Positions 5,387 to 20,286 of a DNA stretch of 64,000 bases are shown here, one piece after another; position 1 is the first letter of the stretch; each line of letters starts with the position of its first letter. The translations under genes were made by a program, and so were the position numbers. The notes beneath the pieces are model-generated. The model had not been told where the DNA came from. It made no database searches and saw only the letters and a list, made by a program, of their open reading frames with translations. The DNA lies in IMG/VR virus record IMGVR_UViG_3300033183_000491, positions 62,001-126,000 of that record; one strand, given 5' to 3'.

Positions 5387-6445
5387 TTATCCTTGACAGC
5401 TTAAACATTCTTCAGGGTCAGCAAAATCTTTAAGTCTATCTTGTTCTACCTTTTGACTAACTTTTTCTGCAGAAGCACCGGCATTTGTTCTTAGATAATA
5501 TAAACCTTTTAATTTCTTTTTCCAAGCTCTAATATGAACTGCATTTACAACAGATTTATCAGTTCCAGCGGGAAAGAATAAATTAACACTTTGTCCTTGA
5601 CAAATAAACTCTTGTCTATCTCCAGCATGATCAACAATCCACCTTTGATCTAGTTCGAATGCAGTTTTAAAAACTTCTTTATGCCAATCTGACATATATT
5701 CTAAATGTTGTACAGAACCTTCAGCCAAAATAATTGATTTCCATTGTTCTTTCATCCATTCTTCAATATTATTATCATTTTCTGTGCAATAACTTCTTAG
5801 AACATTTTCTAGATGTGGATTTTTAACTAAGTAAGATCCGACTCTTGTTCTATGAGTATAGGCATTACTTTTCCAAGGTTCAATCGAAGGAGATGTACCT
5901 GCGATAATAGAAGAATTAGCGTTAGGAGCAATAGCTAATAGGTGAGAATTTCTAACATTATGACCAATACCATCCGGGCATTCACCTTTTATTTTAGATA
6001 ACTCTATTGTTTTCTGTTTTGCTTTTTCTTTAATATCCATGAATATACCTTTGTTTGCAGCAACTGCAATACCAGATTCAAACGGGATATTCTTTTTCTG
6101 TAGGTATGCGTGGAATCCCATGGCACCTAAGCCTAAACTTCTTTCAGATTGTGCAGATTTAATTGCTCTTTCTAAAGCTGGAGGTGCGTTATTAACAAAA
6201 TAAGAAATAACATTATCAAGATATTCTATAAGATCAGCAACAATTGATGTATCTTTCCATTCGTCATATTTTTCAATATTTAAAGAGCTTAAACAACAAA
6301 CTGCGCTTCTTTCAGGAGAAGTGCTAAGATGGATCTCGTTGCAATTGTGAACAAGTATATTATTTGCAAAAAAATTACTATTGTCTTTAACAGTTATATC
6401 GAAGACAGTCTCTTTAGCTTCTCTTTTAATTATTTTTAGTCCCAT
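5387..6445 (-). CDS. nrdA: NrdA C-terminal half fused to split-intein C fragment (IntC 34 aa, 6344-6445)
   Basis: MGLKII...VFDITV...FFANNILVHN then CNEI; CCLSSLN, LGLGAMG, AIAPNANSS, QGQSVN, KGLYY, CLSCQG. Confidence 0.95.
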   Translation of the reverse strand: MGLKIIKREAKETVFDITVKDNSNFFANNILVHNCNEIHLSTSPERSAVCCLSSLNIEKYDEWKDTSIVADLIEYLDNVISYFVNNAPPALERAIKSAQSERSLGLGAMGFHAYLQKKNIPFESGIAVAANKGIFMDIKEKAKQKTIELSKIKGECPDGIGHNVRNSHLLAIAPNANSSIIAGTSPSIEPWKSNAYTHRTRVGSYLVKNPHLENVLRSYCTENDNNIEEWMKEQWKSIILAEGSVQHLEYMSDWHKEVFKTAFELDQRWIVDHAGDRQEFICQGQSVNLFFPAGTDKSVVNAVHIRAWKKKLKGLYYLRTNAGASAEKVSQKVEQDRLKDFADPEECLSCQG

Positions 6446-7184
6446 ATTTCCTACCTTTTATCCATTCTTCATTATTAAGTATATCAATTTCTTTTTTACT
6501 CATTTGCCTTGAAATTTTAAGTTTTTCGTTAGAGTACCAAACTTTTCCTGATAAAGACTTAGAAAGTTTTTTACTGTGACTATTTGTTCTTTTATATTTA
6601 AAATCATCATCTTTTAAATTATACAAATCTTTCATTGCATTTACAAAACCTTTTAAACCTGATCCGTATTTTTTAAATCTAAATTTTGAATAAGACTTTG
6701 GAAAGCCATAGACTTCTGAACTATATATTTGCCACTTTCTTTTAGGTAATTGACCTTCTTTTTTAAAATAAGAAAAAGCTGCTTCTAATATTTCTTCATC
6801 TGTAAATCCTGTATATGTTGGATTTTTTTCTCCTGAAATTGCAATTGATTTTTTTCTTATCCATTCATCATATTTTTCATCGGGTACTACCCATCCTCCG
6901 TCACCGCCTATAGTCATATTATAGCCATTTTTAAAAGTATCATAATATTCTATATAATACTTTTCTTTTTCTAAGGCTTCCTCTTTAGAACTACATTCGC
7001 AAATTACTTTAGATACTATGTTTTTAGGACTGTGTTTTCTAATTGCTCTATAAAAGTGTGTATCTAATCCTGATTGTGCATTTGTAATATGTTTATGTAA
7101 TCTTTTTGACAACGTTAGTCCTGTATATCCAATATACGACTTATTTGTTTGCTTAAAAGTGTGCATATATATTATATATTTCAA
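6426..7184 (-). mobile_element. free-standing GIY-YIG homing endonuclease between the nrdA halves
   Basis: IIY...SYIGYT, conserved R, E and GYNMTIGGDG; NUMOD-like C-terminus (GEKNP, GKVW...WIKGR); TTG start with AAGGAG RBS. Confidence 0.92.
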
Positions 7185-7242
7185 AACGTCTCCTTAAGTC
7201 TGTAAATGAATTTCAATAATAAATATACATCTAGCGATCAAA

Positions 7243-8418
7243 TTAAGAAAAAACTAACTCATCGTCTTCTTTAAGATCTTTAGCTTTTACGTAGCCTCTA
7301 TTTGTAGTGTATACTTTATGATCAGGAGTACAAACTATTTTTTGACCAGACTCTTCGTCTATAATTTCAAGTACTTCCGCGTTTTTACTAATTAATCCTG
7401 CATCAGTAATTTCTTTGTATTCAATTTCTTCTGTATCAATATTGTAAGACAAAACAAAAACTTCTTTTCCTTCATTGAAAAGATTAACAACTTCTTCTAA
7501 TGATATTTGAGAATTTGGAACATTGTCAATTAATACATCAATTTTTGTATCTCCTGTTAAACAAAGATTTGAACCGTGAATTTTTAACCCTAAATCTTTT
7601 TGAAATTGTGGGAGATGTCTATTTGCTTCGTCAATAAAATTGACATAAGGCTCACCTGTCCTAAACCTAACTTGTAGTATTCTCTGCCAAAGTTGTCTTG
7701 CATCTATAGAATCTCTAATAGAACCGTCATTCGGATCAATAAGATTCCATTTTTCTCCTTTTAAAACTGCTTCCATAAAATCATCTGTAATATTTACAGC
7801 ATTATTTAGATTAAAGCATTTGCGATTTACATCACCACCAGTTGGAACTCTAATGTTAAGAAATTCAACGATATCGGGATGTGAAATATCAAGATAAGCT
7901 GCATATGAACCTTTTCTTGTTTTTCCTTGTCGATAAGCTGTCATATCGCTATCGACTGTTTTAAGAAAAGGCACTGGACCGGGAGAAATTGTACTATTTG
8001 ACCTAACGTCACTCCAATGTCCTCCAACGCCTCCTCCTTTTACAGACATCCAACGTAACTCATCTGAATGAGAGATTAGTCCTTCAAGAGAGTCATCAAC
8101 ATATGTTAAAAAACAAGAAATAGGTAATCCTCTTGTCGTTTCTCCTGGTTTAGGAGCATTTGACAGAATTGGAGAACTAAACATAAACCAGCCTTTTGAA
8201 GCATAATCATAAATTCTTTGAGCTAATTCTAAATTATTTATATTGTTTTCTTTTGTATAAAGATCACCTGAAAATGCTACAGCTGCTCTGGCAAAACTTT
8301 CTTGAGGAGATTCTTCATAATCATTCATATAATAATCTCTTAGTAAGTTTTTTGAAAAGTCTGTAAGTAAATTATCCCTATCTAAATCTATAGTAATACC
8401 ATAGCATTCTTTTTTCAT
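7243..8418 (-). CDS. nrdA: NrdA N-terminal half fused to split-intein N fragment (IntN 106 aa, 7246-7563)
   Basis: FSSPIL, PISCF, GGGVG, QGKTRKG, HPDI.EFL, TGEPY, GSNL then CLTGD...CTPDH...DLKEDDEL; no ATP cone. Confidence 0.95.
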   Translation of the reverse strand: MKKECYGITIDLDRDNLLTDFSKNLLRDYYMNDYEESPQESFARAAVAFSGDLYTKENNINNLELAQRIYDYASKGWFMFSSPILSNAPKPGETTRGLPISCFLTYVDDSLEGLISHSDELRWMSVKGGGVGGHWSDVRSNSTISPGPVPFLKTVDSDMTAYRQGKTRKGSYAAYLDISHPDIVEFLNIRVPTGGDVNRKCFNLNNAVNITDDFMEAVLKGEKWNLIDPNDGSIRDSIDARQLWQRILQVRFRTGEPYVNFIDEANRHLPQFQKDLGLKIHGSNLCLTGDTKIDVLIDNVPNSQISLEEVVNLFNEGKEVFVLSYNIDTEEIEYKEITDAGLISKNAEVLEIIDEESGQKIVCTPDHKVYTTNRGYVKAKDLKEDDELVFS

Positions 8419-8432
8419 AAATATTCCTTTAT

Positions 8433-8918
8433 TTAATCTGAACTTCCTATCTTGCCTGATTTTCTCCGGGAAGAATCGGTAATATTTAAATATTCGTCTT
8501 CATCGACAATAGAAAATTCATTGTCACATTTAACAACAACAATTTGTACAGGAAGTTTTTTATATGAATCAAGTTTATATTCTTCAGACCCTGTGTTAAT
8601 TAAATTGACAAAAACTTCCCCAGTATATCCACTATCAATTACTCCCGCTCTAACTTTAAGTGGTGTTTTAGTAATCGATCCTCTTTCTTGAATAAGAGCA
8701 ACATAACCTTTTGGAACCTTCATTTTTAATCCTGTTCCAATTAAAGATTTGTGATTCTTAGGTAAAACAGTTTGAGGAAGAATTGTAACACGATCTCCTG
8801 CGTTATATAAATCTAATCCTGCACTCTCTCCATTATATGCAGGAATATAGTCTTTTACATCTATATTATTTATATTTAAAGCTAATTTTAAACTTTCCAT
8901 TAAACAAATATTAATCAT
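8433..8918 (-). CDS. dut: trimeric dUTPase
   Basis: SAGLDL, ERGS, GVIDSGYTGE, R..G.IGSS motifs; start uncertain. Confidence 0.93.
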   Translation of the reverse strand: MINICLMESLKLALNINNIDVKDYIPAYNGESAGLDLYNAGDRVTILPQTVLPKNHKSLIGTGLKMKVPKGYVALIQERGSITKTPLKVRAGVIDSGYTGEVFVNLINTGSEEYKLDSYKKLPVQIVVVKCDNEFSIVDEDEYLNITDSSRRKSGKIGSSD

Positions 8919-10287
8919 CTTTTTTATTTACCTCTTTCCATTTTTCTCTTAATTTCTCTTTCATAGAGTGATTATCTTGAGTAACTACTTCATTTAGTGT
9001 AAGTTCAGTATCATCAAGAATATCAAATTTTGATTTTGCTGTATCGATGTTGATTGGAAAAAGCAAACCATCTCTACCAGCCCTGTTTTTTGCTACGAAT
9101 ATACGTCCTCCACCAGTTGACTTTTCCATAGGTTTTCTACTAATTGAAAGAACAACATCAGCTACTTGAGCTTTTCCATAAGATTCGCCAAGATTTTCCA
9201 AACCAACAACGTCAGATTTTGAAGAATCTTTATTAGCTTGTGAAGCTGTCCAAATAGGAATATTTAATTCAACTGCGAGGTTTCTTAGTTCAGTATATAT
9301 TAATTTTAATTCATGACGTAAAGAGTCATAAGCTTTAGAAGATTTCATAACATCAGCATAGTCAACCGTAACTAGACTTGGTTTAAATCCTTTTAAAGTA
9401 AGTTTTTCAATATGATTACGCAAAGTCATAACTGACGCAGAACCAGTTGGATATTCTTTAATAATAAGTTTTCCTAAATCCATCGATTTATATTTGTCAA
9501 TGACTTCTTGTTTTCTCTCAATGATTTCATTTGAAGGAATATCACATAAGTTCGAATCATATCTCTTACCTGTATCATGTTCTGATAATTCAAATGTATA
9601 GTGAATAACATTTTTACCAGCACGCATAGCTGCACATCCCATTGCTACCAAAAAGTGAGATTTACCAACACCTGTATTAGCTGCAATAACACCTAATTCT
9701 CCTCTTCCAAGACCACCCCTTAAAATATCAGGAGCATCAATCCTATCTAAACCTGTTGGACAAACTTGACGATTAATTTGAACAAAGCGAGCTTCAATAT
9801 CATCAAAGAAATCATGGCCTGCAGTATTAGGCATACCAACAGAAATAGCTTCTTTCATAATGTTTAAAACAGATTCATATTTTTCTGTTTGAATAAGTTC
9901 AACGCTTTGTTCTAGAGCATCGCGAAAAGCTTGTCTTTTACAAAATTCGAGTGATTTATCTTTTACATATTGTAAATCACCCATATCAGGATTTGTTTTC
10001 ATCCTGTGGAGATATTCAATGATTTGATCTCTTAAGACATGGTCTTTTGATTTAGAAAGATCTTCTTTGATAATAGTTATTAAGATTGTAAGTGTTGGAA
10101 AAGTTTTATATTTCTGATAGTATGAGTAATATCTTTCACATAGATAAGAAAGATATTTTAGATCAAAATAGTCTGAACTCATAACTTCGATCATTTGTGC
10201 AGACCAATGAACATCAGTTAACATACTTTGAAAGACTTTTTCTTGAAAAGCTTTTCCAAATTTAGAGAAGTTTTTTTCTTGACTCAT
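8911..10287 (-). CDS. DnaB/T4 gp41-like replicative helicase
   Basis: ANTGVGKS Walker A, FELSE, IIKEYPT, VDYAD, WTASQANK, KNRAGRDG. Confidence 0.94.
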   Translation of the reverse strand: MSQEKNFSKFGKAFQEKVFQSMLTDVHWSAQMIEVMSSDYFDLKYLSYLCERYYSYYQKYKTFPTLTILITIIKEDLSKSKDHVLRDQIIEYLHRMKTNPDMGDLQYVKDKSLEFCKRQAFRDALEQSVELIQTEKYESVLNIMKEAISVGMPNTAGHDFFDDIEARFVQINRQVCPTGLDRIDAPDILRGGLGRGELGVIAANTGVGKSHFLVAMGCAAMRAGKNVIHYTFELSEHDTGKRYDSNLCDIPSNEIIERKQEVIDKYKSMDLGKLIIKEYPTGSASVMTLRNHIEKLTLKGFKPSLVTVDYADVMKSSKAYDSLRHELKLIYTELRNLAVELNIPIWTASQANKDSSKSDVVGLENLGESYGKAQVADVVLSISRKPMEKSTGGGRIFVAKNRAGRDGLLFPINIDTAKSKFDILDDTELTLNEVVTQDNHSMKEKLREKWKEVNKKDD

Positions 10288-11264
10288 TAAGTATTATTCC
10301 TTAAACATGACTTAAGTGATATTAAAAAAGAATGAATATCGTAAAAATTTAAACCTTCACGATTCATTATTTTCATAAGCTTGAATTTATTGATTTTCGC
10401 TTCTTTGTTTTCATATTGAAAGTTTATTTTTTTTATTTGATCTGCGCTTAACATTGCAGAGTCTAAATACATTAACTTCCAATTTTTAATTAAATGATTT
10501 TTATTTTGTATTATATTACTAAAGAGTTTCAATTTACACCCGTTATTAATTTTTTTATCTGACTCATTAATAATATCATTAATTGATGTTTCTCTTTTCT
10601 GAATTAAATCTGGGAATCTCTTTACTATTGTTTTAATCCCTGCACCTTTGATCCCTTTGATACCATCACTAACATCTCCTGAAAAGCATCTTGCAAGACA
10701 AAAATTGTATGCTGGAACTCCCCAGTTTTCTAATACATATTCTTCATCTATTAATTGCTTTTTATTTGGAGACCAGATTTTAGTATTCTCATCTAAAAGT
10801 TGATAATAATCCTTATCAGAAGTTACTATTATATTTTTTGTATCTTGTTTTTTTGTTTTAACTAGATAAGAAATAACATCATCTGCTTCACAGTCATTTA
10901 CATATATTTGTGTAACAGGTGTATCATATAATATTTCTACTAAAATCTTTAATTGATTATCTCTATTTTCAGTTGTATCTGGAATGTCTTTATAATATTC
11001 ACTTCTATTAAGTTTTACTGGTCTACGTCCTTCTTTGTAATTTGGGTCGATGTTTCTTCTTCTCAAAGATCCTCCACCTTCCCAAGCAACGACTATTTTT
11101 TGAGGTCTAAACTTAGAAGATAAATAATCTATATTTTTAAGAAAACCAATAATTCCTCCACAAAGATTTCCATTTAAAGACTTTGTGGGGTTAGCAGCAA
11201 AATGTCTCATGAAAACATTCAGACCATCAATATAAATAATAGGTTTATCATTATAGTAAATCAA
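10287..11264 (-). CDS. 5'-3' exonuclease / flap endonuclease (T4 RNase H-like)
   Basis: IDGLN, YKEGR, EADDVI, SDKDYYQL, GDVSDGIKGIKGAG H3TH; TTG start. Confidence 0.93.
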   Translation of the reverse strand: MIYYNDKPIIYIDGLNVFMRHFAANPTKSLNGNLCGGIIGFLKNIDYLSSKFRPQKIVVAWEGGGSLRRRNIDPNYKEGRRPVKLNRSEYYKDIPDTTENRDNQLKILVEILYDTPVTQIYVNDCEADDVISYLVKTKKQDTKNIIVTSDKDYYQLLDENTKIWSPNKKQLIDEEYVLENWGVPAYNFCLARCFSGDVSDGIKGIKGAGIKTIVKRFPDLIQKRETSINDIINESDKKINNGCKLKLFSNIIQNKNHLIKNWKLMYLDSAMLSADQIKKINFQYENKEAKINKFKLMKIMNREGLNFYDIHSFLISLKSCLRNNT

Positions 11265-12749: not shown

Positions 12750-13943
12750 TTACTTTAACATTTCAAATGCGTCTTCGTGCACTTCCATAACGTGTTCTGC
12801 AACAGCTCTAATATCTGTATAACTTTCAGGATCAATATCTGGATCTTCTGTTTCGTTCTTTCTAATCATTGCTTTTTCTAAGAGCATGTCAACATATTGA
12901 CTATATTCTGTGTGATTCATAATTTCGCCGAAATCTCCTTTGTAGAATTTCTTTTGAATAATTTGTTCACCATCAGAATTATAGACTTCTAAATGTTTCC
13001 ATGCACCATTTCCTCCTACTTCGATTGTATATCCACCAATTTCTTCTGACCCATGTTTTCTTAATACATCAAAGACTTGTTCGTGTTCTTTAATACCTTT
13101 ACCAAAGTGAATTTCAAAATTACATGTTCTAAATGGAGCTGATACTTTGTTTTTAATTGTTTTAGCAGAAACATTAATCCCGATAGGCTCTTTATCTTTA
13201 TTAAGAATTTGAGAACCTGCACCTAATTTGATACGTACTGAACTATGGAATGGTATTGCCATGCCGCCCGGTGTTGTTGTCGGATCACCATACATTGTGC
13301 CAACTTTTGTTCTAATCTGATTAAGACAAATCATAAGAACTTTTTCGTTTGCAATTACACCAGTAATTTTTCTCATACCTTTTGAAATAGCGCGCGCTTG
13401 TAAGCCAATACTTTCTTTTTCATAATCACCAGTAAGTTCTGCTCTTGGTGAAGTTGCAGCAACTGAGTCCCATATAATTGTAACAGGAACATCTTTGTCC
13501 ATCGCCTTAGCTTTAATAATAGTACTTTCAGCGATGGACAATACTTCTTCTGTACAATGTGTATCTACATAAACAAATCTTTTCTTTATATCGACACCTA
13601 GCATTCTAAGGTTTTCAACTGATGTGGCGTTTTCTGTGTCAATATAGACTACGATTCCTCCCATCTTCTGTGTCGATTTTGCGATTTGAGTTGCAATATG
13701 AGATTTACCAATACTTGGAGGACCAAAGATTTCTACGATTCTACCTTCTGGTAAACCACCATCTTTTTGATTTGATATAATATAATCTAATTGTTTAGAG
13801 CCAGTGCTGATCCATCTGTTAACGTGTGTAGGAGATTCATCAGTACTTAAATTATAAGCGACGCGAGTTCCTCTTTCTTTGTTAAGAGATTTAATGAGAT
13901 CAGATGTAAAATCATCTAATTCTTCTTTTTTCTTTTTAGCCAT
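12750..13943 (-). CDS. recA: RecA/UvsX recombinase
   Basis: ISTGS..LD, GRIVEIFGPPSIGKS, YIDTE, WDSVAA, LNQIR, TTPGG.AIPFHSSVR. Confidence 0.97.
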   Translation of the reverse strand: MAKKKKEELDDFTSDLIKSLNKERGTRVAYNLSTDESPTHVNRWISTGSKQLDYIISNQKDGGLPEGRIVEIFGPPSIGKSHIATQIAKSTQKMGGIVVYIDTENATSVENLRMLGVDIKKRFVYVDTHCTEEVLSIAESTIIKAKAMDKDVPVTIIWDSVAATSPRAELTGDYEKESIGLQARAISKGMRKITGVIANEKVLMICLNQIRTKVGTMYGDPTTTPGGMAIPFHSSVRIKLGAGSQILNKDKEPIGINVSAKTIKNKVSAPFRTCNFEIHFGKGIKEHEQVFDVLRKHGSEEIGGYTIEVGGNGAWKHLEVYNSDGEQIIQKKFYKGDFGEIMNHTEYSQYVDMLLEKAMIRKNETEDPDIDPESYTDIRAVAEHVMEVHEDAFEMLK

Positions 13944-14062: not shown

Positions 14063-14851
14063 TTATAGAGAATCTAGATCTGCAAAGGCATCATCTAAAC
14101 TCTTGTATTTACCGTTAATTGAATCTGGGGAATCATCATCTTGTTTTTGTGAATTATAATTTCCGCCTCTTGTTGTTTCTGAAGAGGATTCTTCATCATC
14201 GTCATTAAGCCAATTATTTACGATTTTTTCAAGATCTTCGTAAGATTTAAGTTCGAAAAGGTCATTAACATCTGGGATTGTATCCAACCATTGCTTTGAC
14301 TTTGATGAATCTTCAGACAAGGGTGAATCTTTTCCACGAGGTCTTACTTCAGTTGTTGCCCACATTTGACCGGGATTTTTTGTACAAATAATACGAACGT
14401 CTCTTCCTTCATGAGGATCAGTAATATCGCCATAATCTTCATCTAACATATAATTTAGAAGAGTTTGATAGACTGATTTTCCAAATGCCCAAAGTCTAAC
14501 ACCTTTTTCTTCTTCACCTCGGACAATAACTGGAGCATAACATCTCATTTTTGGATATAGCTTTTTAGCTAATTCATATGATTCTTTAGATCCTTCATCG
14601 CGAAGTTTTGTAATAAGCTCTTGAATAGGGTCTGGTTTGTCAAATTGATAAGGAGAAAGAAGTCCTGGATTGTTACCGATGTTGTAATAGAACATAAGCT
14701 CTTTAAATGGTTGACCGTCATTATTAGGATAAGCAAGGAGTCTTACTGTTGTTTCGGATCCTTCTTCTGGTCTCCACATAACATTCTTTTTAGAATTTTG
14801 TCCACTGAGTTGACCAAGTTTTTTACGGATTGCTGCTAGATCAATAGCCAT
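14063..14851 (-). CDS. gp32-like single-stranded DNA-binding protein
   Basis: WRP, VR.LAY, DPIQE, GVRLWAFG, DYGDITDP..GRD, acidic tail DDAFADL; next to recA. Confidence 0.88.
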   Translation of the reverse strand: MAIDLAAIRKKLGQLSGQNSKKNVMWRPEEGSETTVRLLAYPNNDGQPFKELMFYYNIGNNPGLLSPYQFDKPDPIQELITKLRDEGSKESYELAKKLYPKMRCYAPVIVRGEEEKGVRLWAFGKSVYQTLLNYMLDEDYGDITDPHEGRDVRIICTKNPGQMWATTEVRPRGKDSPLSEDSSKSKQWLDTIPDVNDLFELKSYEDLEKIVNNWLNDDDEESSSETTRGGNYNSQKQDDDSPDSINGKYKSLDDAFADLDSL

Positions 14852-14972: not shown

Positions 14973-15200
14973 TTATTTATTGTTTTTTAAGTAATATTGA
15001 ACTGATTTTGTTTTTGATTTTTTGTTTTTAGAACGATGCTTTTTATCTGTTGATTTTTGATCTTTATAAATATTTTCTCCATGAGAAGCTGCAGTAGAAC
15101 CTGTACCAAGAGGGGTTGCGACTCCACCGATTGCGCCTGCACCTGAAAATTCGTTTATTAGTTTTTCTAATATTATTTCATAGATATCATCTTCTAACAT
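14973..15200 (-). CDS. small hypothetical protein
   Basis: AGGAG RBS; LINE then Gly-rich FSGAGAIGG, basic tail. Confidence 0.75.
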   Translation of the reverse strand: MLEDDIYEIILEKLINEFSGAGAIGGVATPLGTGSTAASHGENIYKDQKSTDKKHRSKNKKSKTKSVQYYLKNNK

Positions 15201-15230: not shown

Positions 15231-15836
15231 TTAAAATGGAGAAGTGTATGTGTTATCGATTCTATCTTTTTCATCTTTCATTACAGATTCATGCGCTAAT
15301 TGCATTACTAACGAAAGACGACATTTATAATAACCATAAAATTTATTATCTTCAGAGGTTAAGTCTTTAAGTAAAGAGAGAGTTTGCCATTCATCCCAAG
15401 AAAGATTAATCCCGTAATGTTGGATTATAAACAATGTCATATCATTTACTTGGTATTTAGGGCAATTTTCATTCCAATCGTAATATTGACCAAGTTTTTC
15501 TTTATGCCACTCTGATTTTGTTTCAATGAATCTGTCTTCATGGATAGTACCTACTCTTCCTAAGATTGTAAGTAAAGAACATTTTATAATAGAAGATTTA
15601 TTTAAATCATAATTTAAAGCTTTAGAAATATTATTTGCAGATTTTGCAAGTTCTAAAGAATATTCAACGAGTCCTCCAATTCCACAAAAAGGTTCTTTTT
15701 CTCTTTGTGAAAATGATCCAGTTAAAATTCTTTGGCCAAATTGATCAACGATTTTACTCACGTTTTCATCATTTAGCTTATTTAATAGGTTACTATATTT
15801 TTCCCATAAAGATTCAACGTCGCGTTCTTTATACAT
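15231..15836 (-). CDS. HD-domain-like protein with degenerate metal site
   Basis: GGLVEYSL and LLTILGRVG align with GGL.EH and LLHD.GK of YhaM-type HD proteins. Confidence 0.6.
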   Translation of the reverse strand: MYKERDVESLWEKYSNLLNKLNDENVSKIVDQFGQRILTGSFSQREKEPFCGIGGLVEYSLELAKSANNISKALNYDLNKSSIIKCSLLTILGRVGTIHEDRFIETKSEWHKEKLGQYYDWNENCPKYQVNDMTLFIIQHYGINLSWDEWQTLSLLKDLTSEDNKFYGYYKCRLSLVMQLAHESVMKDEKDRIDNTYTSPF

Positions 15837-15846
15837 TAATTTCCTT

Positions 15847-16098
15847 TTATAATTTCCATTTAATTCCTGTTACATTTTGGAATCTTTTTGTTAAGTCTTT
15901 TTTCTTATGAATCATGTCAATAGCAAGATCGATATCACAATCTTTTTTATTAAGCTCAGTCATTAAATCTTTTGATACATTTAAAAGGTTTTGCAAAACT
16001 TCTAATTGAATATCTGAACCTGAAATGTTGACAGAGATATCTTGTCCTTTTATAAATCTTGCTGCAATTTGATGTAATAAGTTCTCATTTATATTCAT
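15847..16098 (-). CDS. hypothetical protein
   Basis: 83-aa ORF with AAGGA RBS in operon. Confidence 0.75.
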   Translation of the reverse strand: MNINENLLHQIAARFIKGQDISVNISGSDIQLEVLQNLLNVSKDLMTELNKKDCDIDLAIDMIHKKKDLTKRFQNVTGIKWKL

Positions 16099-16113
16099 TT
16101 TAATTCCTTTATT

Positions 16114-17163
16114 CTAATCACATGAATTATTAAATTGTGATATAGACACAGGAAAATTACCTAAGTCTTTATCATTATATCCTTTCTTAATTATTTCTGA
16201 AAATTCATTAATATAGTCTTTTTGTATATCAAAAACAATAGCATCATGAATTATAAAAATTGGAACTGCTCTTTTTAAATCTAATTGATTAACAAGTTCA
16301 GAAAAATAAGTTAATGAAATATCAACAGCAGACGATTGGACGAAATTATTAATTATTATATTTTCTTTCTTCTCTTCTAGATTCCAAATTGGTCTTCCAA
16401 AAAAATTTCTTCGTATTCCATGGTCATCTACTTTAGACGATATTTCTAGTAAATACTCCATATTAAAAAATTCTTTGATCGTTTCAAAAATCTTTAAGGA
16501 TTTAGATGCTGATATATTCTTTAAGTTTTCGTGACTTGCACCATACAAAACTGATATTATTGCTCTTTTTATAATTGACCTATCGATATTAAACTCTAAT
16601 AACTCATTGATTTTATTGTAAATGTCTCCATCAATATCATTTCCTACTATTTTTAGACAAAACCTAGGCTCTAAATTTACAAAATCTAAACTTAGCAAAG
16701 ATCCTTCTTTAAATCTACTCTCAAATATATTTCTGCATCTTTTAGGTAATGTTAAAATGTTTGGACCATTATTTACAATAAGCCTTCCTGAAATGTTTTG
16801 AGAGTTATCAAATTCACACCTGTCAGCATAACCTTGATTAGGTTTAAATGACTTTAAATTACTTAAAATACTTTTATTTATTTCTAAAGTTTGAATTGCT
16901 TTATATGCTAACGAATTAATTTTAGATCTTTCTATATTAGAAAAGAGACTATCATAGTTTTCTAGTCTTTTAACATATCCTAGTGAATCAATTAAATTTA
17001 TATTATCTAATATTTCTTTCTTGTGATTTGTAAATTCTTCTAATAGATAATCTGGTATTACTTCTTCTTCTTCGTAATTCTCGTTATTCTGTTCGAAGAA
17101 TTTAAACATTTTCTTAAAGTGATCATTATAATTTGTATTATATATTCTAAATAATTTTTTCAT
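16114..17163 (-). CDS. small family A DNA polymerase-like protein (palm/fingers, no exonuclease)
   Basis: SGRL...PNI, motif A SLDFVNLEPR, motif B R...K.....LYG, NFFGR, N..VQSSAVD, motif C IHDA. Confidence 0.82.
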   Translation of the reverse strand: MKKLFRIYNTNYNDHFKKMFKFFEQNNENYEEEEVIPDYLLEEFTNHKKEILDNINLIDSLGYVKRLENYDSLFSNIERSKINSLAYKAIQTLEINKSILSNLKSFKPNQGYADRCEFDNSQNISGRLIVNNGPNILTLPKRCRNIFESRFKEGSLLSLDFVNLEPRFCLKIVGNDIDGDIYNKINELLEFNIDRSIIKRAIISVLYGASHENLKNISASKSLKIFETIKEFFNMEYLLEISSKVDDHGIRRNFFGRPIWNLEEKKENIIINNFVQSSAVDISLTYFSELVNQLDLKRAVPIFIIHDAIVFDIQKDYINEFSEIIKKGYNDKDLGNFPVSISQFNNSCD

Positions 17164-17169
17164 GTTTAT

Positions 17170-17198
17170 ATGATAACATAAACAATGTAAATTTACAC
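17170..17198 (-). promoter_or_regulatory. promoter GTGTAA-17-TATCAT; predicted leaderless transcript
   Basis: -10 ends 7 nt before the ATG at 17163; no SD sequence. Confidence 0.6.
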
Positions 17199-17199
17199 T

Positions 17200-20100
17200 T
17201 TATTTTTTAATATCTTCCCATTCAACATATTTAAATTTTTCCAAGTAATCTGAATTGAGTTCGTCAGATCCCTCGTCAGATTTTTTGTTTTCATTACCAT
17301 ATCTGTCTTTAACTTGTTCAAGTAATATTTTAAAAGCTGTTTCTTTTTCAATAGACTTAACATTATAGATACCAGAATTAGCTCTAGAGTTTATGATTTC
17401 TCGAAGCCAAGTATCAGCAGTTGAAATAGTATCTTGATTACCCCAAACGTGTTTTGATGTTGGTTTGTATTTTTTTATACTTAAATTATTTTTAAATTTA
17501 ACACGGGAAGCAATGCCATCACTTGGATTTAAAGAAACAGTTTTATTTTCAAGTTTTTTTTCAAGTTTTTTAATACTTTCTGGATTTGCATATTTAAAAA
17601 TTTCATTAAGACTTACTTGAGAAGTATCTTCTCCTGATAAGAGATTGAAATCTTCGTATATTTGCGATTGATTAATTATATCAATATGAAATCCATTATA
17701 TTTTTTACCATTTGGTCTTAATGGGACTCCTCGTTCATCTAAAACAATCCTTCCTTTAAACTTTTTTGTGTTTTCATCGAGGCTTTTAATTGTATTAACA
17801 TTCTTCGTTGTTATTCCATATCTATGTGGTTTTGGATAAGCCATATAATCAATACCTGCACCTACATTGTTTGCGCCTAGATTAAAACATGTTTTTATAA
17901 AAAATTGTGTTATTTTAAAGTCATCGTCATCATTAGGATCATATAAACAAACATTTTTTTGTTCACCATCAATATTTCTAACTAAATATATATCAGCAGC
18001 ATATCCTAAAGCGTGGTTCATATCTCCGCCGTGTGATCTTTTTAGTATTTTTTTTAACATATTTTTTTTGTTTCTAATATTTCCTTGAAGAAAAAGACCA
18101 AACTCTTCTACGTTTTCTGTAAGACTTCCTAAATCTTCTGTATAAAATGTATAAAATGTTTTAGCTATTTTATACCATAAATTTATTGATAAAGAACCGC
18201 CACTAATAATTTTAACTTTTTCTAAAGAAGGATAAACTTCTTGCGTCAACTTAAAAGATTCATCTATTATCTTTAATAATTTAGGCTGAATGTTGCTTCT
18301 TCTTTCAGTCCAAGCATCATATTCAAAACCATATTCTATATTACTACTCCCCGTAGGATTTTGCTTTCCATTTGGGTTATCTTCGCTAATATTATTTAAC
18401 TTTATAAATTCATCTTGGTTTCCTCCACCCACGAGATTTATTTTGTCTATTATTTCTTCTTTTATTTTTTTTATTCTATCTTTGTAAACATATCCAGTGT
18501 TTTTTAAACTTGAAAGTTTTCGCTTATCCTTTTTAGACATATTGATGCTTTTTGAAGAAGTTTTATCATTTGAAATCTTTAAAACCTGTTCGCTTTTTCC
18601 TTTAAATAAATCTTCTTCGATAATTTCATCTTCTTCAAAAACTAAAGATGACGTTCTAATAATCGAAGAATCTTCTTCAGACTCAGTGTCAGATTCTTCG
18701 ATTAAAGACCTTCTATCATAAGAGTTTTTGTTATACTCTGATTTTAAATCATATAAAATTGATGAATAATAATCTTCTCTAAATTCAGGATAAAAATATA
18801 AATTAGGATCTCTCTTGGTAAGAGTATCTCCTAATTCTTTATAGTCGATAGATAAATATTTTTTACCATAAAGATTATGTAACAAAAAAATATTTTTTTG
18901 TTTAGAGAAAATATTTTTTTTAAAAATACATTTATCTATTATCATATTAACATTGATTGAATAAGTTTCATCAATCTTATAAAATAAATTAAAATCGCTA
19001 TCTCCTGGTTTTAAATTATAATACTTTGAAAATGGTTCTGGTGTTTTTGTAAATTTCTCTTTCTCTTTAGTAAGAAGATATTCTCCGTTTATTGTATTTA
19101 AATAAATATCTGGTTCGAACAAATGAAAATTTGAATATTCATCATCTGATATTACTTGATTATTTAAAAAAACGTTTTGATTTTTTGCTATCTTATCATC
19201 TAATATAGTATATTCAAAAACAAAATAAATTTTATTGTCTTCACTTGAAAAATAAATATCTTTTATAAAGTCTATACTAGACAAACCATCTAAAGTATAA
19301 CTGTCTAGTATAGACTTTATATCTTCATAAGACATAATACTACATTCGTTAGAAATTTCGAAAGAAGTGTTTGTTAATGTCGACTTTAAAATTTCATTAT
19401 CATTTTTGTATAACTCTATACCGACTGAAGATGTTATTGATTGTCTTAAATATGTATTATTTTTATTAGATGAAAAAACTGAAAAGAAAGCCAACGAATA
19501 TTTGTTAAAAAAGTCAACCCCAGCCTTATCAGTATTATTAATTGTAAAATCTTCTCTAAGTTTAGACAGTATTTTATTGTAATCATTAAATGTTAAAGAT
19601 TTTACAGAAAAACCTACAGTTCTAGAGAAATCATTTTTATCTTTATACACATCAGAAATATTTTTTATATAAGAATAATAAAAATCTTTATTGTTATAGT
19701 TATAGAACTTCGATGTAAAATCATCGTTTTCTCCTGTTTCCAAAACTATTTCTTCTAAAGACTCATATCCTTCCATTTGGTCAATTGTTTTTGAAAAATC
19801 TATTGTATCAAAGTCTTTTCCAAGAAATAAATCTTCTGTGTTATTTAATGTTATTTGAGCTTTAATACTTGGATCCATTTTAAAAACTATTTCTTTTTGC
19901 GGAATAAAAGAAGAATGTTTTAATAGATTTTTATTTGTACCTGATAATTCAAATGCAAAAGAAAAATTTTGATCTTCAACTTCGTTATTAAATATTACTC
20001 TTCCATACGTTTCATAGTTTTTAATATTATTAAGAACATATCTAAATTCATCAATAAAAGAATAATAAGATCTACTCTTAAATTTTTCAATAATCTCAAT

Positions 20101-20286
20101 ATCAGACTCAGGAGGATTTTTTAAATAATCAATTATAGATTTGTCATTACAAAAGTTATTTAAAAATCCGTTACTGTAAAAGAATAGATTTTCCCATTTG
20201 TTAGAATAATATCCAGGAAAATGTGTTTCAAAGTTTATTTTAAAAGAATTTTCACTTTGTGAGTATTTGTCTTCTATTGAACTCAT
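17200..20286 (-). CDS. large putative baseplate/virion protein with C-terminal M15-like (LAS) peptidase motifs
   Basis: NHALGYAADI ... GFHIDI; last gene of the baseplate cluster. Confidence 0.55.
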   Translation of the reverse strand: MSSIEDKYSQSENSFKINFETHFPGYYSNKWENLFFYSNGFLNNFCNDKSIIDYLKNPPESDIEIIEKFKSRSYYSFIDEFRYVLNNIKNYETYGRVIFNNEVEDQNFSFAFELSGTNKNLLKHSSFIPQKEIVFKMDPSIKAQITLNNTEDLFLGKDFDTIDFSKTIDQMEGYESLEEIVLETGENDDFTSKFYNYNNKDFYYSYIKNISDVYKDKNDFSRTVGFSVKSLTFNDYNKILSKLREDFTINNTDKAGVDFFNKYSLAFFSVFSSNKNNTYLRQSITSSVGIELYKNDNEILKSTLTNTSFEISNECSIMSYEDIKSILDSYTLDGLSSIDFIKDIYFSSEDNKIYFVFEYTILDDKIAKNQNVFLNNQVISDDEYSNFHLFEPDIYLNTINGEYLLTKEKEKFTKTPEPFSKYYNLKPGDSDFNLFYKIDETYSINVNMIIDKCIFKKNIFSKQKNIFLLHNLYGKKYLSIDYKELGDTLTKRDPNLYFYPEFREDYYSSILYDLKSEYNKNSYDRRSLIEESDTESEEDSSIIRTSSLVFEEDEIIEEDLFKGKSEQVLKISNDKTSSKSINMSKKDKRKLSSLKNTGYVYKDRIKKIKEEIIDKINLVGGGNQDEFIKLNNISEDNPNGKQNPTGSSNIEYGFEYDAWTERRSNIQPKLLKIIDESFKLTQEVYPSLEKVKIISGGSLSINLWYKIAKTFYTFYTEDLGSLTENVEEFGLFLQGNIRNKKNMLKKILKRSHGGDMNHALGYAADIYLVRNIDGEQKNVCLYDPNDDDDFKITQFFIKTCFNLGANNVGAGIDYMAYPKPHRYGITTKNVNTIKSLDENTKKFKGRIVLDERGVPLRPNGKKYNGFHIDIINQSQIYEDFNLLSGEDTSQVSLNEIFKYANPESIKKLEKKLENKTVSLNPSDGIASRVKFKNNLSIKKYKPTSKHVWGNQDTISTADTWLREIINSRANSGIYNVKSIEKETAFKILLEQVKDRYGNENKKSDEGSDELNSDYLEKFKYVEWEDIKK

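What the first reader, a model, noticed from the sequence alone, without database searches (positions are those of the whole stretch)
15231..17198. Operon of a minimal PolA-like protein, a small protein and a dead HD domain
Seen: a 349-aa protein keeps PolA motifs A (D..LE.R), B (R...K....YG) and C (HD, with E changed to A) but has no 3'-5' exonuclease and a very short thumb. It is followed closely by an 83-aa ORF and an HD-fold protein whose metal ligands are replaced (H to Y, HD to TI). Inference: not the replicase. It could be an accessory gap-filling, error-prone or template-independent polymerase, with the dead HD protein as a nucleotide-binding partner. I know of no described function for this trio.
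Basis: partly seen in the sequence, partly recalled or inferred. Interest (0 to 1): 0.68.

Follow-up and report, generated by a model that had tools for sequence, protein, structure and literature searches.

The report
Exo-less phage PolA with dead HD partner
A 240-kb marine phage that has its own Pol III-type replicase also carries a stripped-down Pol I-type DNA polymerase. Its gene is almost always followed by a YhaM-like HD nuclease gene, which in this lineage has lost its metal-binding residues but is still strongly conserved.

Summary
Window 16114-17163(-) encodes a 349-aa family A polymerase domain (Pfam above cut-off; KlenTaq Z 25). It has no 3'-5' exonuclease domain, a reduced thumb and motif C 'HDA'. 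Window 15231-15836(-) encodes a YhaM-type HD domain (Z 16.8) whose H and HD ligands are Y and TI.

New context:
1. The 239.5-kb genome also encodes a Pol III alpha (family C) gene, split by an intein, and a DnaG-type primase. The PolA-like protein is therefore not the only polymerase.
2. The conserved unit is the pair, not the trio. 74 of 80 related viral loci have the HD gene just downstream; the 83-aa gene is in only 14.
3. Distant clades keep canonical H..H[D/E]..K ligands. The dead form falls on one well-supported branch of the polymerase tree, yet is more conserved than the polymerase.
4. Synteny (PolA, SSB, RecA, FEN, DnaB, RNR) matches 'divPolA1' of Yutin et al. 2024, so the polymerase is a variant of a described but uncharacterised kind. 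I found no description of the HD partner.

Best reading: an accessory gap-filling or repair polymerase. Its former trans 3'-exonuclease partner has become a non-catalytic accessory protein. Physical binding is not shown.

The parts
16114..17163 (-). 349-aa family A DNA polymerase consisting of the pol domain only (compact palm, fingers and thumb). It has no 3'-5' or 5'-3' exonuclease domain, motif C is H-D-A, and motif B position B3 is Ile.
   Evidence: ORF. Pfam PF00476 at 41.6 bits against cut-off 34.3. Model pLDDT 91.9. Foldseek E 1e-10 to Taq and Klenow. VIA Z 25.0 over 330 residues. Catalytic residues invariant in 50 homologues and 80 loci.
15847..16098 (-). 83-aa conserved small protein of unknown fold, inserted between the polymerase and HD genes in one subclade only.
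   Evidence: ORF. Homologues of 82-84 aa at the same place in 14 of the 80 loci, plus L005; median dN/dS 0.32. Absent where the PolA and HD genes abut. No Pfam, PHROG or Atlas lead.
15231..15836 (-). 201-aa stand-alone YhaM-type HD domain with its metal ligands replaced (Y59, T90, I91, R94). H111 is kept, and Cys51, Cys86 and Cys125 are invariant in this clade.
   Evidence: Model pLDDT 89. YhaM 9h3f_A Z 16.8 over 173 residues. Broad family profile A3 hits only YhaM/Cbf1 in the PDB, E 2.7e-5. Ligand columns. Atlas cluster 'HD domain-containing protein', TM 0.89. Mean column identity 76%.
14973..15200 (-). 75-aa ORF with an AGGAG ribosome-binding site. It belongs to a family encoded directly after the HD gene in most related loci, either alone or as the N-terminus of a protein of about 500 aa. 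Function unknown.
   Evidence: jackhmmer hits right after the HD gene in most loci. No Pfam family.
14063..14851 (-). Context: gp32-like single-stranded DNA-binding protein.
   Evidence: Pfam gp32 2.3e-10 and PHROG 1192. Same position in relatives.
12750..13943 (-). Context: RecA/UvsX recombinase.
   Evidence: Pfam RecA 2.9e-63.
10287..11264 (-). Context: stand-alone 5'-3' exonuclease (FEN), the Pol I 5'-nuclease function encoded as a separate gene.
   Evidence: Pfam 5_3_exonuc_N 2e-28.
8911..10287 (-). Context: DnaB-type replicative helicase.
   Evidence: Pfam DnaB_C 1.1e-23.

Best explanation
Shown:
- The 349-aa protein is a catalytically intact family A DNA polymerase reduced to its pol domain. 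It lacks proofreading.
- It is encoded at the head of the phage's recombination and replication module: SSB, RecA, FEN, DnaB, dUTPase, RNR.
- The genome also encodes a Pol III alpha-type polymerase and a DnaG-type primase elsewhere.
- The polymerase gene is followed on the same strand, usually within a few bases, by a YhaM-type HD-domain gene.
- In distant clades that HD protein keeps the canonical metal ligands. In the window's clade they were lost, and the protein stayed highly conserved.

Inferred:
- The polymerase plays the Pol I role for this phage. It fills short gaps during Okazaki-fragment maturation, excision repair (UvdE and Fpg are encoded) and possibly D-loop extension, working with the stand-alone FEN and the ATP-dependent ligase. 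Pol III alpha does the bulk synthesis.
- The ancestral HD partner acted in trans on 3' ends, as a YhaM-like 3'-5' exonuclease for proofreading or end cleaning.
- In this lineage the HD protein has become a non-catalytic accessory protein that still binds the 3' end or single-stranded DNA, or the polymerase itself.
- The 83-aa protein is a late, lineage-specific addition.
For: - Polymerase identity and intact active site.
- No exonuclease domain.
- Second polymerase and primase in the genome. Pol III alpha is also present in 3 of 5 related partial records, including both from the distant clade, and PolB in none.
- Pol III alpha is far more conserved than the PolA-like protein between the two closest genomes: 94% and 86% against 66%.
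- Pol I-like division of labour: FEN genes, ligase and UvdE, Fpg.
- Pair conservation: the HD gene lies downstream on the same strand within 1.13 kb in 74 of 80 loci. In 33 of them the gap is estimated at -16 to +21 nt, i.e. the genes abut or overlap; L002 and L004 do too.
- HD identity.
- Canonical ligands in the distant clade and Pfam HD hits just below the cut-off.
- The dead state sits on one branch of the polymerase tree (support 100/95, 35 rows) that has since diversified widely.
- The dead HD protein is more conserved than the polymerase: mean column identity 76% against 45%.
- YhaM is a ssDNA-specific 3'-deoxyribonuclease, and its HD-to-AA mutant binds ssDNA more strongly (PMC12107432).
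Against: - No experiment exists and no expression data were found.
- The complex prediction gave no answer, so binding between the two proteins is unproven.
- The PolA-like gene, not Pol III alpha, sits inside the conserved replication module. Yutin et al. read this as a sign that divPolA1 takes part in replication itself.
- No beta clamp was found for Pol III alpha, so its status as sole replicase is also an inference.
- The motif C Glu is Ala family-wide, which in Klenow mutants lowers catalysis (established knowledge, not tested here). The rate may be low or the metal chemistry altered.
- In B. subtilis, deleting yhaM gave no mutator phenotype (PMC5627055), so there is no precedent for YhaM as a proofreader.
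- Flavobacterium phage immuto and Microcystis phage Mel-JY01 have a syntenic PolA but no detectable HD partner.
Confidence: 0.5

Rival explanations
1. The PolA-like protein, with the HD protein as accessory subunit, is a true replisome polymerase. It would act as a co-replicase with Pol III alpha, for example extending primers on one strand as in the DnaE/PolC division of labour, or even as the main replicase.
For: It heads the conserved module of SSB, RecA, FEN, DnaB and RNR. Pol III alpha lies 27 kb away among mixed genes. Yutin et al. argue the same for divPolA1 (PMC11348598). No beta clamp was found. Active-clade partners could supply proofreading.
Against: It has a short thumb and no proofreading in this clade. 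It evolves much faster than Pol III alpha: 66% identity against 94% and 86%. Pol III alpha is kept functional through an intein arrangement.
Confidence: 0.2
2. It is an error-tolerant translesion polymerase for UV-damaged or oxidised templates in surface-ocean phages. It would be analogous to the exonuclease-less family A enzymes Pol theta and Pol nu.
For: No proofreading and a reduced thumb. The genome carries UvdE and Fpg. The family comes from marine metagenomes, including Tara samples.
Against: The steric-gate Glu, the O-helix R/K/Y and Q276 are all canonical and invariant. Ile or Leu at B3 is linked with slower but more accurate synthesis (PMC6302109). No Pol theta-like inserts appear in the model.
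Confidence: 0.12
3. The HD protein is not dead but rewired. Clade-specific Cys51, Cys86 and Cys125 together with the retained His111 would bind a metal such as Zn. That metal could keep a 3'-end-processing activity or stabilise the fold.
For: C51, C86, H111 and C125 are invariant in the dead clade. Positions 86 and 125 are Val and Leu or Ile in the canonical clade. Position 86 lies one helical turn before the former HD dyad. The protein is very strongly conserved.
Against: Cys3His sites are usually structural rather than hydrolytic. The Lys of HDxGK is also changed to Arg.
Confidence: 0.12
4. It is a CcPol-MP-like primase: an exonuclease-truncated PolA that gains de novo priming from a small partner protein encoded just downstream.
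For: The exonuclease domain is reduced to a few helices and the thumb is short, as in CcPol (PMC10061031, PMC10201439). A small gene follows the polymerase: the 83-aa ORF here, and a 140-210-aa 'middle' protein in 29 loci of the distant clade.
Against: The genome has a DnaG-type primase. The small proteins are not conserved across the family, and 33 loci have none between the PolA and HD genes. No Cch2/MCM helicase follows. No OB fold has been shown.
Confidence: 0.04

Closest known systems
divPolA1 of Flavobacterium phage vB_FspM_immuto and relatives (Yutin et al. 2024, PMC11348598)
   Same: [quoted passage not shown] Its thumb is truncated and it has no exonuclease activity. It is followed by the same genes, SSB, RecA, FEN, DnaB and RNR. 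The regular polymerase lies near GroEL and nucleotide-metabolism genes, as here. Motif C also has Asp-Ala.
   Different: Immuto's protein is 441 aa and keeps an inactivated exonuclease domain, whereas this one is 349 aa with the domain gone. Sequence similarity is marginal: hhalign E 0.012, and the family HMM finds nothing. Immuto has no detectable HD partner. The published marine members could not be fetched.
Pol I large fragment (Klenow, KlenTaq, Bst)
   Same: Same fold over 330 residues (Z 25). Motifs A and B and the motif C Asp are the same. The presumed gap-filling role with a 5' nuclease is the same.
   Different: There is no 3'-5' exonuclease domain, and the 5' nuclease is a separate gene. 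The protein is about 125 residues shorter over the aligned range. Motif C Glu is Ala, and B3 is Ile.
CcPol-MP primase-polymerase of SCCmec and other Bacillota mobile elements (PMC7581432, PMC10061031)
   Same: It is a PolA reduced to the pol domain with a remnant of the exonuclease helices and a short thumb. It is encoded in an operon with a small partner that changes its properties.
   Different: The CcPol partner is an OB-fold SSB followed by a helicase, and the elements are Bacillota islands. Here the conserved partner is an HD domain, the hosts are marine phages, and a DnaG-type primase is present.
Split T7-like exo/pol genes, for example cyanophage S-SBP1 (PMC10201439)
   Same: A pol-only PolA gene lies next to a gene that supplies, or once supplied, the 3' exonuclease function in trans.
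   Different: There the neighbour is the cognate DnaQ-like exonuclease domain separated by a frameshift. Here the neighbour has an unrelated HD fold.
YhaM / Cbf1 3'-5' exonuclease (PDB 9h3f, 9o7t; PMC12107432)
   Same: The HD domain has the same sub-type (Z 16.8; profile E 2.7e-5). Canonical-clade orthologues keep the H..HD..K..H..H pattern.
   Different: There is no N-terminal OB domain. In the window protein the catalytic H and HD are replaced. The oligomeric state is unknown.

Membership tests
Family A DNA polymerase (PF00476) | Profile match above the curated cut-off | tested here: met
   41.6 bits against 34.3; 41.1 bits in the genome scan.
Family A DNA polymerase (PF00476) | Klenow-type palm, fingers and thumb fold | tested here: met
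   VIA Z 25.0, rmsd 3.2 A, 330 residues against KlenTaq. Foldseek E 1e-10.
Family A DNA polymerase (PF00476) | Catalytic Asp of motif A and motif C, and motif B R..K..Y-G | tested here: met
   D160, D307, R195, K199, Y207 and G208 are invariant in 50 homologues and 80 loci.
Family A DNA polymerase (PF00476) | Motif C Glu after the Asp (HDE) | tested here: not met
   Ala in 78 of 80 loci and Ser in 2. At least 90% Ala in alignment A1.
divPolA1 (Yutin et al. 2024) | Encoded in addition to a regular polymerase | tested here: met
   Pol III alpha at genome 46232-51081. Also present in 3 of 5 related records.
divPolA1 (Yutin et al. 2024) | Conserved downstream replication genes | tested here: met
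   The order of SSB, RecA, FEN, DnaB and RNR is the same in the window and in immuto_3-5A.
divPolA1 (Yutin et al. 2024) | Sequence relatedness to published members | tested here: inconclusive
   hhalign against immuto gene 1 gives E 0.012 and is collinear over 225 columns. The family HMM finds no hit. GOV-bin members are not in the collection.
divPolA1 (Yutin et al. 2024) | Inactivated 3'-5' exonuclease domain still present | tested here: not met
   The model begins at the equivalent of Taq 373 and Klenow 442, so only the last helices of that domain remain.
CcPol-MP primase | OB-fold partner and Cch2-type helicase directly downstream | tested here: not met
   The downstream genes are the 83-aa ORF (in a subclade only), HD, the 75-aa ORF and SSB. 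The fold of the 83-aa protein was not predicted.
CcPol-MP primase | De novo priming activity | not testable with these tools
   Needs biochemistry. A DnaG-type primase gene is present.
HD superfamily, YhaM type | HD-domain fold closest to YhaM | tested here: met
   Z 16.8 over 173 residues; the next HD proteins score 9.7 or less. Profile hit to YhaM/Cbf1 at E 2.7e-5.
HD superfamily, YhaM type | Metal ligands H...HD...(H, H, D) | tested here: not met
   The window protein has Y59, T90 and I91. The same columns are H, H and D/E in the canonical clade and in most of about 140 representatives.
HD superfamily, YhaM type | N-terminal OB domain of YhaM | tested here: not met
   The 201-aa protein aligns to YhaM residues 103-288 only. 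Family members are about 190-210 aa.
HD superfamily, YhaM type | 3'-5' exonuclease activity | not testable with these tools
   Needs an assay. Activity is predicted to be absent here and present in the canonical-clade orthologues.

The most novel reading that the evidence does not exclude
The minimal PolA and the YhaM-type HD protein form a two-subunit polymerase of a kind not described before. In ancestral clades a non-DnaQ HD nuclease supplies 3'-end editing in trans. In the window's clade that nuclease has been converted into an obligatory non-catalytic subunit: a 3'-end or ssDNA clamp, possibly with a rewired Cys3His metal site.
Probability: 0.22. Interest if true: 0.75.

Novelty: new variant of a known kind. 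Interest (0 to 1): 0.55.

Why it matters
Family A polymerases are workhorses of replication, repair and biotechnology. This family is widespread in marine viral metagenomes: more than 200 protein clusters in one search and 226 viral loci in another. It is close to the smallest natural PolA with a complete, conserved active site.

Its constant companion is an HD nuclease of the YhaM type rather than a DnaQ-type proofreader, which suggests an alternative solution to 3'-end editing. The one-time loss of the nuclease's metal ligands, followed by long retention under strong constraint, is a clean natural example of an enzyme turned into a pseudo-enzyme partner.

It also bears on an open question raised for divPolA1 phages: which of their two polymerases does what.

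Tried and rejected
- Complex prediction of the PolA-like and HD proteins: score 0.00, verdict 'no answer'. I do not use it as evidence either way.
- Single-sequence search for related loci: no relatives found. The alignment-based scan worked.
- tblastn against the phage collection with the window protein and with a distant-clade member: only generic PolA hits at 22-28% identity. The 201-aa protein found nothing meaningful.
- Pfam and PHROGs gave nothing for the 201-aa, 83-aa, 75-aa and 1028-aa proteins. Pfam also gave nothing for the distant-clade 'middle' proteins or the longer forms of the 75-aa family.
- The narrow HD profile A2 against PDB sequences gave no hit. The broad profile A3 did.
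- Protein Atlas search for the 83-aa protein: no usable hit.
- RNA sequencing runs: none was listed.
- 'The PolA-like protein is the only polymerase, and perhaps one half of a split gene': rejected once Pol III alpha was found. The family is uniformly about 350 aa in more than 100 clusters.
- 'It is the phage's primase': made unlikely by the DnaG-type zinc-ribbon gene.
- A weak RNase_T hit lies inside a DinG/XPD-type helicase and is not a proofreader candidate.
- Moraphages (PMC12619734) are a different, PolB-encoding lineage.
- The promoter and terminator scan was no better than shuffled sequence.
- MK892584 is not held in the collection.
Full report
**What is in the sequence.** The window is bases 62001-126000 of a 239,550-bp viral record with direct terminal repeats. 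It is estimated complete and has 29% G+C. On the minus strand, packed tightly, lie:
- a 1028-aa ORF with no family match (17200-20286);
- the 349-aa PolA-like gene (16114-17163);
- an 83-aa ORF (15847-16098);
- the 201-aa HD-like gene (15231-15836);
- a 75-aa ORF (14973-15200);
- then gp32-like SSB, RecA/UvsX, a 5'-3' exonuclease (FEN), DnaB, dUTPase and ribonucleotide reductase.

The spacers inside the group are 15, 10 and 30 nt, each with an AAGGA or AGGAG site. Beyond the 1028-aa ORF come tail and baseplate genes.

**The polymerase.**
- The 349-aa protein passes Pfam's DNA_pol_A cut-off (41.6 bits against 34.3).
- A family profile aligns it to Aquifex and Taq Pol I from residue 91 or 116 to the C-terminus.
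- Its model is confident (pLDDT 91.9). It superposes on KlenTaq with Z 25.0, rmsd 3.2 A and 330 residues, model 1-347 against Taq 373-829 and Klenow 442-926.
- The whole pol domain is therefore there in compact form. It is preceded only by the equivalent of the last helices of the exonuclease domain, and the thumb is a short helical hairpin.
- More than 200 homologues, nearly all 347-357 aa, come from marine metagenomes.
- In 50 of them and in 80 viral loci, the motif A Asp and Glu, the O-helix Arg, Lys and Tyr-Gly, Gln276 and the motif C His-Asp are invariant. The residue after the motif C Asp is Ala in 78 of 80 loci. Position B3 is Ile or Leu.
- This is an enzyme under selection for catalysis. 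The 'HDA' motif is a family signature and not a lesion.

**It is not the only polymerase.**
- The genome has no PolB and no Pol I-type exonuclease domain.
- It does have a family C polymerase. A 931-aa ORF carries the PHP, Pol III alpha NTPase and finger domains, and a 358-aa ORF carries the HhH domain. A 328-aa endonuclease-like ORF separates them (genome 46232-51081).
- Comparison with the closest relative shows that the two pieces are the two exteins. About 93 extra residues lie at the end of the first piece. A 37-residue leader ending GILQSN|S begins the second. This is a split-intein 'fractured gene', so the product is probably rejoined.
- Pol III alpha is 94% and 86% identical in its two matched stretches between these two genomes, against 66% for the PolA-like protein.
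- Pol III alpha is also present in 3 of 5 related partial records, including both from the distant clade. PolB is in none.
- A DnaG-type zinc-ribbon primase gene lies at genome 131461-132510.
- The genome also encodes an ATP-dependent ligase, UvdE, Fpg and a second FEN.

**The HD protein.**
- It has no Pfam or PHROG match.
- Its model is confident (pLDDT 89). It matches the HD domain of YhaM (9h3f_A) at Z 16.8, rmsd 2.9 A over 173 of 201 residues. This is far above the other rows, which are all HD proteins at Z 9.7 or less (Foldseek agrees).
- An exhaustive profile search found 542 representative relatives, mostly stand-alone proteins of about 190-210 aa.
- A profile of 74 of them hits only YhaM/Cbf1 in the PDB (E 2.7e-5).
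- The nearest Atlas clusters are viral. One of them is annotated as HD.
- YhaM is a Mn-dependent, ssDNA-specific 3'-deoxyribonuclease that forms hexameric rings. Its HD-to-AA mutant is dimeric and binds ssDNA more tightly (PMC12107432).

**Co-conservation.**
- In four metagenomic contigs the 201-203-aa gene follows the polymerase gene, abutting or overlapping it in two of them. The 83-aa ORF is present only in the closer relative.
- In 80 IMG/VR loci with PolA-like genes at 27-66% identity, an HD-family gene lies downstream on the same strand within 1.13 kb in 74.
  - 33 have an estimated gap of -16 to +21 nt, so the genes abut or overlap.
  - 14 have a gap of 250-300 nt that holds an 83-aa homologue.
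  - 27 have a larger gap.
- In the distant clade the gap holds another conserved protein of 140-210 aa with no known family (29 loci).
- The 83-aa gene is real (dN/dS about 0.3), but it is a subclade-specific insert.
- The 75-aa ORF after the HD gene also has homologues at that position in most loci. They are often the N-terminus of a protein of about 500 aa.

**History of the dead site.**
- Partners in the distant clade have H59, H90, D/E91, K94, H111 and H132, and they score just under Pfam's HD cut-off.
- Partners in the window's clade have Y/F59, S/T/A/L/V90, I/V/E/D91 and R94. They keep H111 and have gained Cys86 and Cys125.
- On a maximum-likelihood tree of 68 polymerase sequences, the 35 rows with a dead partner are one side of a single branch (support 100/95). 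Duplicates and fragments under 250 aa were left out. That clade has since diverged by more than one change per site.
- Within it the HD protein is more conserved than the polymerase: mean column identity 76% against 45%.
- A protein kept this well after losing its ligands is doing something that does not need them. Partial erosion of the site is also seen in other branches.

**Interpretation.**
- The best-supported reading is a Pol I-like division of labour. Pol III alpha with DnaB and the DnaG-type primase replicates. The pol-only PolA, with the separate FEN and ligase, fills gaps in lagging-strand maturation, excision repair and perhaps recombination intermediates.
- The HD neighbour was ancestrally a trans-acting 3' exonuclease or end cleaner for a polymerase that has none. 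In this clade it persists as a non-catalytic accessory.
- Identity and context are shown. The role, the ancestral activity and the physical interaction are inferred.
- The complex prediction returned no answer.
- The main rival is that the PolA-like enzyme is itself part of the replisome, since it, and not Pol III alpha, sits in the conserved replication module. Translesion synthesis, a rewired metal site in the HD protein and CcPol-like priming are lesser rivals.

**Comparison with the literature.**
- Yutin et al. 2024 (PMC11348598) described 'divPolA1', an extra divergent PolA in Flavobacterium phage immuto and related large phages and marine bins. Its thumb is truncated, its exonuclease is dead and the same downstream genes follow it. 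Their 'regular' polymerase (family A, B or C) sits near GroEL and nucleotide-metabolism genes, as Pol III alpha does here.
- Immuto_3-5A shows the same gene order. Its 441-aa protein also has Asp-Ala in motif C. It is only marginally similar in sequence (hhalign E 0.012) and has no HD partner.
- Microcystis phage Mel-JY01 has a 408-aa homologue annotated as hypothetical (E 1e-14 to 1e-16), also without an HD partner nearby.
- The 19-cluster PolA classification (PMC10201439) lists only two exonuclease-less kinds: split T7-like genes and CcPols. CcPol-MP (PMC7581432, PMC10061031) shows that a truncated PolA can acquire new properties from a small partner.
- YhaM has been tested as a trans proofreader for DnaE in B. 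subtilis, and no mutator effect was seen (PMC5627055).
- I found no description of a PolA-HD pairing.

**Verdict.** The polymerase is a further-reduced variant of a recently described but uncharacterised kind. The conserved YhaM-type partner and its conversion to a pseudo-enzyme are the new elements.

Noticed in passing
window 5387-8418 (-): The ribonucleotide reductase large subunit is a 'fractured gene'. It consists of an N-part with an N-intein (7243-8418), a free-standing GIY-YIG endonuclease (6426-7184), and a C-intein with the C-part (5387-6445). Relatives have a single ORF of 593-601 aa.
   Followed up: partly
outside the window: genome 46232-51081 (-), loci L010/L103: Pol III alpha is split in the same way by a 328-aa DUF559/Vsr-like zinc-finger ORF. 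The two pieces carry intein-like ends, and the second piece starts with 37 residues ending GILQSN|S. The closest relative is joined at this site but is split at another site, near residue 162.
   Followed up: partly
window 14973-15200 (-): The 75-aa ORF has an acidic N-terminus, a Gly-rich middle and a Lys-rich tail. It belongs to a family encoded right after the HD gene in most related loci. In many relatives it is the first 80 or so residues of a protein of 490-560 aa with no Pfam match.
   Followed up: partly
loci L065-L101, between the PolA-like and HD genes: A conserved protein of 140-210 aa sits between the two genes in 29 loci of the distant clade. Its N-terminal motif resembles FIRKQIRRIL. 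It has no Pfam match and is absent from the window's clade.
   Followed up: partly
window 17164-17199: A perfect 12-bp palindrome, TGTAAATTTACA (17186-17197), lies in the 36-nt spacer before the polymerase gene. That gene has no Shine-Dalgarno sequence, whereas the next three genes have AAGGA or AGGAG.
   Followed up: no
window 17200-20286 (-): The 1028-aa ORF directly upstream has no Pfam or PHROG match. Its homologous position in relatives holds proteins of 483-969 aa. It probably belongs to the structural block that follows.
   Followed up: no
outside the window: genome 1-62000 and 182000-230000: The genome carries an unusually rich repair and metabolism set for a phage: UvdE, Fpg, ATP-dependent ligase, two FENs, two ThyX, GroEL, adenylosuccinate synthetase and lyase, GMP reductase/IMPDH, AdoHcy hydrolase, PIN-PhoH, a DinG/XPD-type helicase and an RNA ligase. 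No beta clamp N-domain was found.
   Followed up: partly
loci L019/L020: A canonical member of the stand-alone HD family (214 aa) lies among glycosyltransferase and methyltransferase genes on phage-like contigs, with no PolA-like gene nearby. The HD family is therefore wider than the polymerase pairing.
   Followed up: no
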